A stretch of DNA of 64,000 nt from the NCBI GenBank assembly GCA_053919585.1, contig CM132805.1; one strand, written 5' to 3'. A program made the translations under genes and the position numbers. The stretch comes from Euprymna scolopes. Its lineage: Eukaryota. Of this stretch, positions 28,726 through 29,327 are shown in pieces (the first letter of the stretch is position 1; every line of letters begins with the position of its first letter). Under the pieces are notes generated by a model. The model made no database searches. It was not told the origin of the DNA and was given only the letters and a program-made list of their open reading frames with translations.

Positions 28726-29327
28726 TAAAATATATTTTATATATTATATAGCCCCCCCCCTCGTTGGGTAGAGCACTATCGTAAATAATCTCACTCGCTA
28801 CTTAATTTGGCTGAAAAATGCGAAGCTCGCGGTTTGTTTACAAACACACGTTTGAACATTTTATGAGTAGCGGACGGATGTTTATTTAAAAAGACATTCG
28901 GGTAGATTAGTTGCGGGCACCGCTTCCGTGGTCGAGGGGTAGAACTGCCGACTGTCATAACGACGGTTCTGGGTTCGATCCTCGACTTGGTATAGGTAAT
29001 AGTCTAGCGGGACTGATGAGTTGTGATACAACGAAACAAGACTTTATGTCGATGACTAAAATATATTTTATATATTATATAGCCCCCCTCCTTGGGTAGA
29101 GCACTATCGTAAATAATCTTACTCGCTACTTAATTTGGCTGAAAAATGCGAAGCTCGCGGTTTGTTTACAAACAAACGTTTGAGCACTTTATGAGTGGCG
29201 GACGGATGTTTATTTAAATAGACATTCGGACAGATTAGTTGCGGGCACCGCTTCCATGGTCGAGGGGTAGAACTGCCGACTGTCATCACGACGGTTCTAG
29301 GTTCGATCCTCGACTTGGTATAGGTAA
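28726..29327 (+). mobile_element. 331-bp tandem repeat (1.8 copies) containing tRNA-like Pol III head and hammerhead ribozyme (retrozyme/Sm-alpha-like)
   Basis: The unit starts TAAAATATATTTTATATATTATATAGCCCCCC at 28726 and 29057. It has A-box TGGTCGAGGGG, anticodon-like loop CTGTCAT and B-box GGTTCGATCC. Hammerhead at 29001-29057: AGTC tag CGGGA-CTGATGA-GTTGT gat ACAAC-GAAAC...TA-TGTCG at GACT. Confidence 0.88.

What the first reader, a model, noticed from the sequence alone, without database searches (positions are those of the whole stretch)
28726..29327. 331-bp tandem unit coupling a tRNA-derived Pol III promoter to a hammerhead ribozyme: candidate retrozyme / Sm-alpha-like circRNA element
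Seen: a 331-bp head-to-tail unit made of a ~195-bp leader, a tRNA-like head (A-box, tRNA-Asp-like CTGTCAT loop, B-box) and a type I hammerhead (CTGATGA, stem II GTTGT/ACAAC, GAAA). The unit boundary falls right at the ribozyme 3' end, and a remnant of a preceding ribozyme end (AGTCTGATC) lies at 28717. Known: metazoan non-LTR retrozymes are tandem repeats of a few hundred bp with type I hammerheads that yield circular RNAs, and schistosome Sm-alpha is a tRNA-headed hammerhead SINE. Inference: multimeric transcripts self-cleave into ~331-nt monomers that circularise and are re-inserted, probably by a Penelope-like RT. I know of no such family described in cephalopods. Stem III of this copy is partly decayed.
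Basis: partly seen in the sequence, partly recalled or inferred. Interest (0 to 1): 0.9.

Follow-up and report, generated by a model that had tools for sequence, protein, structure and literature searches.

The report
Decayed copy of hammerhead retrozyme repeat
This is a worn-out, cut-short copy of a short mobile repeat, present thousands of times in this large cephalopod-like genome, whose unit pairs a tRNA-like promoter-type segment with a self-cutting hammerhead RNA; the kind is known from schistosomes, mussels and newts, so it is a new example, not a new system.

Summary
Window 28726-29056 is a 331-bp unit, and 29057-29327 is a second copy, 95% identical, cut at unit position 274 by another repeat. 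The unit carries box A/B-like motifs and a hammerhead core.

Across the family the ribozyme is a type I hammerhead that would cut after GUA (window 29046|29047), not after GUC. Compensatory changes between two ribozyme classes support this. The window copy has three substitutions that break stems I and III, so it is probably inactive.

The locus is not unique:
- The genome holds at least 1,735 units of this family.
- It holds 2,739 exact copies of this ribozyme and 22,907 hammerheads of this design in several families.
- Reversed-pattern controls gave 0.

Insertions have variable 5' ends and a fixed TA-rich 3' end. About half lie in (TA)n, often as 1.1 to 3.4 head-to-tail units. An abundant RT+GIY-YIG Penelope-like element also ends in (TA)n, and twice lies tail-to-tail with these elements.

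Best reading: a non-LTR retrozyme / Sm-alpha-like family, a new member of a known kind. Circular RNA, Pol III transcription and cleavage are untested; poly(A) RNA-seq was uninformative. Rfam and tRNA models miss it. The scan had already flagged this system elsewhere in this genome.

The parts
28694..28717 (.). (TA)12 microsatellite at the 5' flank; the likely target tract
   Evidence: about half of 28 family insertions have (TA)n on both sides
28717..28725 (+). AGTCTGATC: possible leftover of the 3' strand of stem I from a preceding, 5'-truncated unit
   Evidence: Weak likeness to GTCGATGAC, which precedes TAAAAT in intact copies. L024 starts at GTCGATGAC. Too short to prove.
28726..29056 (+).
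28726..28750 (+). TA-rich tract (unit positions 1-25) holding a T4 run at 28735-28738. Family insertions end inside this tract.
28751..28921 (+). About 170-bp non-coding body specific to this family (marker GGCTGAAAAATGCGAAGCTCGCGG)
   Evidence: 1,735 genome matches with up to 2 mismatches, control 0
28922..28999 (+). tRNA-like segment: box A-like 28929-28943, box B-like 28972-28982. In the folded intact monomer (L012) the matching segment forms a long hairpin, not a cloverleaf.
   Evidence: Read from the sequence; fold. No tRNA by ARAGORN or Rfam.
29000..29058 (+). Type I hammerhead, decayed. Distal stem I is 29000-29004/29054-29058 and proximal stem I 29008-29012/29047-29051. The core CUGAUGA is 29013-29019. 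Stem II is 29020-29024/29028-29032, followed by GAA at 29033-29035. Stem III is 29036-29039/29042-29045. The inferred cut is after A29046. Three positions differ from the family majority and break pairs: 29011 (C>G), 29039 (G>A), 29044 (G>T).
29057..29327 (+). Unit 2, 95% identical to unit 1, cut at unit position 274, so it has no hammerhead. Boxes at 29257-29271 and 29300-29310.
29328..29560 (+). Start of an unrelated abundant repeat that ends unit 2. Not part of the element.
   Evidence: 2,458 first-look candidates, 95-97% identical, starting at query position 5
24353..24699 (+). Related class-B element in the same window (tRNA-like head + dead hammerhead + partial second copy with an intact hammerhead). 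It supplies the compensatory changes.
27134..27203 (-). Related 70-nt, 5'-truncated class-A-like insertion holding only the hammerhead, which is decayed

Best explanation
The locus is an old, mutated insertion of about 1.8 units of a non-autonomous, non-coding retroelement family of the non-LTR retrozyme / Sm-alpha kind.

Shown:
- The family unit (about 325-331 bp) has four parts in order: a TA-rich tract, a 170-bp body, a box A/B tRNA-like segment and a type I hammerhead.
- The hammerhead has a full catalytic core and a 5+5-bp stem I with an internal loop.
- It has a 5-bp stem II and a 4-bp stem III closed by only 2 nt. Stem III is nearly (class A) or perfectly (class B) palindromic.
- Copies are dispersed on many contigs with variable 5' ends and a constant TA-rich 3' end. 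They often lie in (TA)n, without detectable target duplications, and often exceed one unit in length.

Inferred:
- RNA longer than one unit (a multimeric transcript, or a circle made after hammerhead cleavage and ligation) is copied by target-primed reverse transcription that starts in the TA-rich tract.
- The reverse transcriptase most likely belongs to the abundant RT+GIY-YIG Penelope-like element, which also ends in (TA)n.
- The short palindromic stem III suggests the ribozyme works best as a double hammerhead formed by two units.
- The window copy itself has lost pairing in stems I and III and has lost its second ribozyme, so it is most likely inert.
For: Family and dispersal:
- 3,886 first-look candidates; 40 scored at 91-95% identity on more than 25 contigs.
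- Body marker 1,735 matches, exact class-A ribozyme 2,739, generic design 22,907. All reversed controls gave 0.

Insertion anatomy:
- 5' starts lie at unit positions 1-13 or 154-282 in 29 full-unit copies, and at 13-154 in shorter ones. 3' ends lie in the TA-rich tract (blastn ends at unit 19-26, or at 331 just before it).
- Arrays run up to at least 3.4 units.
- There are no target duplications beyond TA repeats.

Ribozyme:
- On 55 copies, 92.1% of cells pair, against 18-50% for slid controls.
- Pair 2.4/1.4 is GC 34, CG 14, UA 1, UG 2. Pair 10.2/11.2 is UA 39, CG 14.
- GUA is kept in both classes.
- The hammerhead-fold energy is -10.6 kcal/mol for the majority and -2.8 for the window copy.
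- The stem III self-duplex is -12.3 (class A), -15.4 (class B) and -1.3 (window).
- The lowest-energy cofold of two class-B copies is a double hammerhead.
- The monomer RNA folds at -107.3 kcal/mol, z = -4.78.

Penelope-like element:
- 15,395 GIY-YIG candidates, many with open frames of about 806 aa.
- RT plus C-terminal GIY-YIG confirmed.
- Its 3' UTR ends in (TA)n in at least 9 copies.
- It lies tail-to-tail with the hammerhead element across one (TA)n tract in L031 and L034.

Literature on the kind: PMC7229834, PMC8557442, PMC2770079.
Against: - No Rfam hammerhead model reaches threshold: Hammerhead_3 scores 17.4-17.6 bits against 48.5, and Hammerhead_1 is not listed.
- Poly(A) RNA-seq shows only low, two-stranded coverage and no pile-up of ends at the predicted site. 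So neither cleavage nor circles are shown.
- The fetched Penelope-like copies share no sequence with the unit and hold no canonical hammerhead.
- Co-occurrence with Penelope-like tails could merely reflect a shared liking for (TA)n: about 0.27 close pairs expected, 2 seen.
- Compensatory changes come from only two or three lineages of copies, and many rows are dead copies.
Confidence: 0.75

Rival explanations
1. An ordinary linear SINE. Pol III starts at the tRNA-like head and makes a linear RNA that a LINE or Penelope-like enzyme copies. The hammerhead is a passenger or only trims transcripts, no circle is involved, and multi-unit copies come from transcripts of dimeric source genes.
For: - Box A/B motifs lie at tRNA spacing.
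- 15 of 18 extra partial units start at or after unit position 201, that is, inside or after the head.
- A T4 run follows the ribozyme.
- Class-B copies such as window 24353-24699 start at the head.
- Sm-alpha is described this way (PMC2770079).
Against: - Three starts lie upstream of the head (unit positions 154-167), and arrays of 2.3 to at least 3.4 units exist.
- Some insertions run past the T4 run to unit position 25 next to non-TA flanks (L002).
- tRNA models find no tRNA.
- The 170-bp body lies upstream of the head in every full unit.
Confidence: 0.3
2. These are solo or partial pseudo-LTRs of an autonomous hammerhead-bearing Penelope-like element, not a separate non-autonomous family.
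For: - Penelope-like elements carry tandem minimal hammerheads with palindromic stem III in their pseudo-LTRs (cited in PMC7229834 and PMC8557442).
- Tandem and inverted partial copies occur here (L034).
Against: - The abundant RT+GIY-YIG element shares no similarity with the unit and has no such hammerhead within the fetched copies.
- No RT fragment adjoins any of the 60 hammerhead loci, apart from inverted 3' UTR tails.
- Other Penelope-like families were not examined.
Confidence: 0.08
3. A simple local DNA duplication around a dispersed SINE.
For: Only 1.8 units are present at this locus, and the two copies differ by 5%, so a local origin cannot be excluded from this locus alone.
Against: The same head-to-tail layout with seamless junctions recurs at 17 or more independent loci on different contigs, with partial first units of different lengths.
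Confidence: 0.03
4. The hammerhead-like motif is a chance or dead resemblance with no catalytic meaning in the family.
For: Rfam scores are far below threshold. The lowest-energy fold of one isolated motif is not the hammerhead fold, with z = -1.44. No cleavage signal appears in RNA-seq.
Against: - All core nucleotides are invariant across 55 copies, while flanks vary.
- Compensatory changes occur in stems I and II.
- There are 22,907 exact matches against 0 in the control.
Confidence: 0.05

Closest known systems
Sm-alpha / Sj-alpha SINE-like retroposons of Schistosoma (Ferbeyre 1998 and Laha 2000, as cited in PMC2770079 and PMC8490949)
   Same: About 335-bp unit; tRNA-related Pol III-type head followed by a type I hammerhead; more than 10,000 dispersed and tandem copies; non-coding.
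   Different: - The host is another phylum.
- tRNAscan-SE calls Sm-alpha heads tRNA-Gln, whereas here no tRNA model fires.
- Here stem III is a 4-bp palindrome-type stem and Rfam Hammerhead_1 does not match.
- Here the 170-bp body precedes the head within the unit, and insertions end in (TA)n.
- No direct sequence comparison was possible, because no reference sequence was available from a tool.
Metazoan non-LTR retrozymes (Cervera and de la Pena 2020, PMC7229834), for example the mussel 350-390-bp repeats
   Same: Short head-to-tail repeats of 150-450 bp; one type I hammerhead per unit; G+C below 45-50%; no LTR, PBS or PPT; co-existence with Penelope-like elements; a highly self-paired monomer RNA.
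   Different: - Circular RNA is shown there but untested here.
- Arrays here are mostly short (1-3 units) and dispersed.
- The papers I searched (find) do not mention a box A/B tRNA-like segment for those families.
Minimal type I hammerheads of Penelope-like elements, and the newt/axolotl satellite hammerheads that act as dimers (cited in PMC7229834 and PMC8490949)
   Same: Very short stem III with a palindromic loop; predicted double-hammerhead pairing of two copies.
   Different: Here stems I and II are full length, so the motif is canonical rather than minimal. It is also not found inside the Penelope-like copies examined.
Ceph-SINEs of squids and cuttlefish (Akasaki 2010, as described in PMC5786205)
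   Same: tRNA-type head; decapodiform cephalopod host is likely.
   Different: Ceph-SINEs carry a Ceph/CORE domain and an RTE-derived part. Only a 7-nt overlap (CCTTGGG) with the quoted Ceph-domain word is seen here, and no hammerhead is reported for them. Not tested against their sequences.

Membership tests
Hammerhead ribozyme, type I | Conserved core CUGANGA ... GAAA plus a cleavable UH triplet (H not G) | tested here: met
The core is invariant in 55 copies.
Hammerhead ribozyme, type I | Three helices around the core, open at helix I, supported by compensatory change | tested here: met
   92.1% of cells pair, against 18-50% for slid controls. Compensatory pairs occur in stems I and II. In the window copy, stems I and III are broken at 29011, 29039 and 29044.
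Hammerhead ribozyme, type I | Match to the Rfam Hammerhead_1 or Hammerhead_3 models at gathering score | tested here: not met
   Hammerhead_3 scores 17.4-17.6 bits against a cut-off of 48.5. Hammerhead_1 is not listed.
Hammerhead ribozyme, type I | Self-cleavage | tested here: inconclusive
   Poly(A) RNA-seq showed no ends at the site, and the TA-rich neighbourhood was skipped by the tool.
Non-LTR retrozyme (PMC7229834) | Head-to-tail repeats of 150-450 bp, each with a type I hammerhead, low G+C, no LTR/PBS/PPT, no coding capacity | tested here: met
   Units are about 325-331 bp, in arrays of 1.1 to at least 3.4 units, with 42.9% G+C. No ORF search of the unit itself was run; no 150-aa ORF overlaps it.
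Non-LTR retrozyme (PMC7229834) | Expressed as unit-length linear and circular RNA | tested here: inconclusive
   Only poly(A) libraries could be laid.
Non-LTR retrozyme (PMC7229834) | Co-existence with Penelope-like elements | tested here: met
   shared (TA)n ends and tail-to-tail pairs
tRNA-derived SINE | Internal box A and box B at tRNA spacing | tested here: met
   TGGTCGAGGGGTAGA at 28929 and GGTTCGATCCT at 28972. The box B region (GGTTCGATCC or a close variant) is conserved upstream of the hammerhead in both classes. This is motif-level evidence only.
tRNA-derived SINE | Head recognisable as a tRNA, with an identifiable parent tRNA | tested here: not met
   ARAGORN at default settings finds none, and relaxed settings give inconsistent calls. 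Rfam gave no hit of any family, tRNA included, at E up to 10 on 106 nt for class A; class B gave only a chance UCA1 hit.
tRNA-derived SINE | Element begins at the head (Pol III start) | tested here: not met
   5' ends of this family are spread over unit positions 1-282, and full units carry the 170-bp body upstream of the head.
Sm-alpha family proper | Sequence homology to Sm-alpha | not tested
   No Sm-alpha sequence was available from a tool. The failure of Rfam Hammerhead_1 argues against close kinship; that its seed includes the Sm-alpha hammerhead is from my own knowledge, not checked here.

The most novel reading that the evidence does not exclude
A superfamily of retrozymes in a decapodiform cephalopod, built on a conserved tRNA-like/hammerhead module.
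- It has about 23,000 ribozymes in several families with units of about 177, 284, 314 and 320-331 bp.
- The module would be transcribed by Pol III.
- It would cleave only as a double hammerhead in multimeric RNA and so yield abundant circles of about 325 nt.
- A (TA)n-targeting Penelope-like element would copy it in trans, sometimes in one paired event with the element's own RNA, which would explain the tail-to-tail joints.
- Rfam misses the system. RepeatModeler-based SINE counts may miss it too (inferred from a paper on another assembly, not checked).
Probability: 0.3. Interest if true: 0.6.

Novelty: new member of a known kind. Interest (0 to 1): 0.4.

Why it matters
If the family is active, it would add cephalopods to the animals that make ribozyme-processed small circular RNAs.

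It would also give a case where a Pol III-type head is fixed next to the ribozyme in several families, which bears on the open question of how animal retrozymes are transcribed.

The practical point is already solid. About 23,000 hammerheads of this design score far below Rfam thresholds. A recent cuttlefish genome paper reports almost no SINEs (PMC13218726), so standard annotation probably leaves this system unclassified.

The shared (TA)n ends and tail-to-tail joints with a Penelope-like element offer a concrete handle on which enzyme moves retrozymes.

The window copy itself is a dead relic.

Tried and rejected
- **Rfam:** the gathering scan of the window found nothing. E-value scans of the locus and of intact copies gave only a partial Hammerhead_3 match.
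- **tRNA tests:** ARAGORN and the Rfam tRNA model found no tRNA on the heads, so I dropped 'tRNA-Asp-derived'.
- **TRF:** it did not report the 331-bp period.
- **Single-motif fold:** it does not give the hammerhead fold.
- **RNA reads:** poly(A) reads and contigs showed no cleavage ends, no strand bias and no informative joints. Only one read-laying run was allowed, so total or small-RNA libraries could not be tried.
- **Penelope-like copies:** a search for the hammerhead or the unit inside 14 loci found none.
- **Window ORFs:** Pfam hits on ORFs of at least 150 aa near the locus were simple-repeat artefacts.
- **Target duplications:** none found beyond TA repeats.
my first count of it was mis-specified and should be ignored. 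The argument against GUC rests on column 60 of alignment A1.
- **Literature:** PMC108972 (Ferbeyre 1998) is not held. One literature search was too broad to be useful.

Full report
**What is at the coordinates**

The window holds a (TA)12 tract (28694-28717), then nine bases AGTCTGATC, then a 331-bp unit (28726-29056). A second copy follows (29057-29327) and is 95% identical. It stops at unit position 274. From about 29328-29332 an unrelated, younger repeat begins, with at least 2,458 first-look candidates at 95-97% identity. The missing end of unit 2 is nowhere else in the window.

- a TA-rich tract with a T4 run (unit positions 1-25);
- a body of about 170 bp;
- a segment with a box A-like word (28929-28943) and a perfect box B word (28972-28982) at tRNA-like spacing;
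- a hammerhead core CTGATGA-GTTGT-GAT-ACAAC-GAAAC (29013-29037).

That core pattern occurs 4 times in the window against 0.03 expected.

**The locus is not unique**

The unit finds 3,886 first-look candidates in the 5.9-Gb assembly. The 40 that were scored are 91-95% identical and lie on more than 25 contigs.

| Pattern | Genome matches | Reversed control |
|---|---|---|
| 24-nt body marker, up to 2 mismatches | 1,735 | 0 |
| Exact 44-nt class-A ribozyme | 2,739 | 0 |
| CTGATGA(N12-16)GAAACAGNACTGTA | 22,907 | 0 |

The last set holds at least two large classes and several unit lengths. Tandem spacings of 177, 284, 314 and 319-331 bp are visible on contig 1. DNA runs labelled as a second species hold 0.61 of the unit's sampled words, and others hold small shares.

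**The ribozyme**

Copies close to the family majority read:

TAGUC UAG CGGCA CUGAUGA GUUGU GAU ACAAC GAA ACAG GA CUGU A | UGUCG AU GACUA

This is a type I hammerhead:
- a 5-bp proximal stem I, an internal loop and a 5-bp distal stem I;
- a 5-bp stem II that opens with G10.1-C11.1;
- a 4-bp stem III closed by two bases;
- a GUA cleavage triplet.

Class B (for example window 24634-24707) reads CCGCA ... GCUGU GAA ACAGC ... ACAG UA CUGU A | UGUGG.

On 55 distinct copies the structure pairs in 92.1% of cells, against 18-50% when partners are slid by 1-3 columns. Pair 2.4/1.4 is G-C in 34 copies, C-G in 14, U-A in 1 and U-G in 2. Pair 10.2/11.2 is U-A in 39 and C-G in 14. The core columns are invariant.

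It would also leave stem I without its proximal helix. So the GUA site is the better reading.

Stem III with its loop, ACAGUACUGU, is a perfect palindrome in class B and one base short of one in class A. The stem III self-duplex energy is -15.4 and -12.3 kcal/mol respectively. The lowest-energy cofold of two class-B copies is a double hammerhead. This is the behaviour described for newt/axolotl and Penelope-type hammerheads, which cleave better as dimers (PMC7229834).

Rfam does not recognise the motif. The best match is a partial Hammerhead_3 hit of 17.4-17.6 bits against a cut-off of 48.5.

**The window copy**

Relative to the majority, it has C>G at 29011 (stem I), G>A at 29039 and G>T at 29044 (both stem III). 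The energy of the hammerhead fold falls from -10.6 to -2.8 kcal/mol, and the stem III self-duplex from -12.3 to -1.3. With unit 2 cut before its ribozyme, the locus holds one crippled hammerhead. It is a relic.

**The tRNA-like segment**

The box B region (GGTTCGATCC or a close variant) sits directly upstream of the ribozyme in both classes, so the head and the ribozyme travel as one module.

Its tRNA origin could not be verified:
- ARAGORN finds nothing at default settings and gives inconsistent calls when relaxed.
- Rfam gives no hit of any family, tRNA included, at E up to 10 on 106 bases for class A. For class B it gives only a chance UCA1 match.
- In the folded intact monomer (L012) the segment is a long hairpin, in which the box A arm pairs with the box B arm.

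I therefore keep 'box A/B-bearing, tRNA-like' and drop 'tRNA-Asp-derived'. Pol III use remains an inference. The T4 run 14 nt after the cleavage site, present in most internal junctions, would tend to stop Pol III before a second unit. That counts against Pol III-made multimers.

**How copies were made**

Among 29 insertions that hold a full unit:
- The 3' end always lies in the TA-rich tract (blastn ends at unit 19-26, or at 331 just before it). It is usually followed by (TA)n.
- The 5' end is at unit positions 1-13 in 11 copies and at 154-282 of an extra upstream unit in 18 copies.

Copies chosen only for an intact ribozyme start anywhere from unit position 13 to 154, and one array has at least 3.4 units. 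About half have (TA)n on both sides. No target duplication other than TA repeats is seen.

A fixed 3' end with 5' truncation is the signature of target-primed reverse transcription. Copies longer than one unit with seamless junctions need a template longer than one unit, either a multimeric transcript or a circle. No insertion ends at the cleavage site, so the last ribozyme of the template was uncut or religated.

I cannot separate circle from multimer. The absence of 5' starts at unit positions 14-153 among the copies longer than one unit is unexplained.

**Which enzyme**

GIY-YIG matches number 15,395 first-look candidates, many inside open frames of 804-808 aa and often in inverted pairs. 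One such frame has RVT_1 at residues 330-513 and GIY-YIG at 686-769, the canonical Penelope-like layout.

The 3' UTR of this element ends directly in (TA)n in at least nine copies. In L031 (class A) and L034 (class B) the hammerhead element and an inverted 3' end of this Penelope-like element lie tail-to-tail across one (TA)n tract. L034 also has an inverted partial ribozyme copy.

Craig et al. report a (TA)n bias and tandem/inverted insertions for some Penelope-like clades (PMC8557442). Against this, the element shares no sequence with the unit and no canonical hammerhead was found in the copies fetched. Two close pairs against about 0.27 expected is weak support, given that both kinds of element favour (TA)n.

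**RNA evidence**

Six runs on record as RNA hold part of the unit. Raw poly(A) reads from three runs gave tens of reads on both strands, peaking over the head and ribozyme that many families share. There was no pile-up of ends at the predicted sites, and the tool skipped the TA-rich parts next to them. This is what passive transcription of repeats looks like. It says nothing about small non-polyadenylated RNA.

The unit-length RNA cut at the inferred site folds at -107.3 kcal/mol with z = -4.78, in line with the self-paired retrozyme RNAs described in PMC7229834.

**Comparison with what is known**

The anatomy matches non-LTR retrozymes in repeat size, type I hammerhead, low G+C (42.9%) and company of Penelope-like elements.

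With its Pol III-type head, it matches Sm-alpha even more closely. Sm-alpha is 335 bp, its heads are called tRNA-Gln by tRNAscan-SE, and S. mansoni has about 38,500 hammerhead candidates (PMC2770079, PMC8490949).

The retrozyme papers I could search do not mention cephalopods. The giant squid genome paper lists 235 Rfam Hammerhead_1 hits without further study (PMC6962438). A cuttlefish genome paper reports almost no SINEs (PMC13218726). I cannot name the species of this assembly.

The scan itself has noted tRNA-plus-hammerhead elements and Penelope-like elements in this genome at least 15 times. One follow-up reached the same verdict.

**Verdict**

This is a real feature and a real family with a well-supported ribozyme structure, but a known kind. 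The particular copy is dead. Cleavage, circles and Pol III use remain to be shown.

Noticed in passing
window 24353-24699: A class-B element: tRNA-like head, a hammerhead with a dead core (CCGATCA), a (CA)n/(TA)n stretch, then a partial second copy with an intact hammerhead whose stem III and loop, ACAGTACTGT, is a perfect palindrome.
   Followed up: partly
window 27134-27203 (-): A 70-nt, 5'-truncated insertion of a class-A-like subfamily (TACAAATA tail), holding only a decayed hammerhead.
   Followed up: partly
window 7909-7948 (-): Another CTGATGA...CGAAAC core with a long insert where stem II would be. Not examined.
   Followed up: no
window 29332-29560 and beyond: An abundant, younger repeat (at least 2,458 first-look candidates, 95-97% identical) that cuts unit 2. 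Its class is unknown.
   Followed up: partly
window 29500-29950: Three diverged head-to-tail units of about 133-150 bp (repeat finder families D2 and D4).
   Followed up: no
window 28286-28299 and 28712-28725: The 14-mer TAT(T/A)TAGTCTGATC occurs twice. The first lies just before the N stretch 28309-28536, which was left unread. This may be chance, or the edge of another copy.
   Followed up: no
L031:1322-1500 and L034:1556-1983: The 3' end of the RT+GIY-YIG Penelope-like element lies inverted, tail-to-tail with a hammerhead element across one (TA)n tract. L034 also has an inverted partial hammerhead copy and an inverted pair of Penelope-like tails.
   Followed up: partly
L020:3101-3174 (-), L028:717-790 (-), L059:2043-2116 (+), L022:1255-1327 (-), L026:1006-1079 (-): Further, unrelated hammerhead-like families in the flanks. 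One has CTGATGA TTCC CGAAA GGAT GAAAC followed by the perfect palindrome ACACTAGTGT, in the Penelope-type minimal style.
   Followed up: no
L004:3037-3153: A 5S rRNA-like sequence, 71.7 bits, above the Rfam cut-off. It may be a 5S-derived repeat.
   Followed up: no
family-A insertions L002-L030: In copies longer than one unit, the extra upstream unit always starts at unit positions 154-282 (18 of 18) and never at 14-153. Shorter copies do start in that range. This is unexplained.
   Followed up: partly
window 55446-56120 (+): An ORF fragment with an RT_RNaseH domain (63 bits), probably an LTR-retrotransposon remnant.
   Followed up: no
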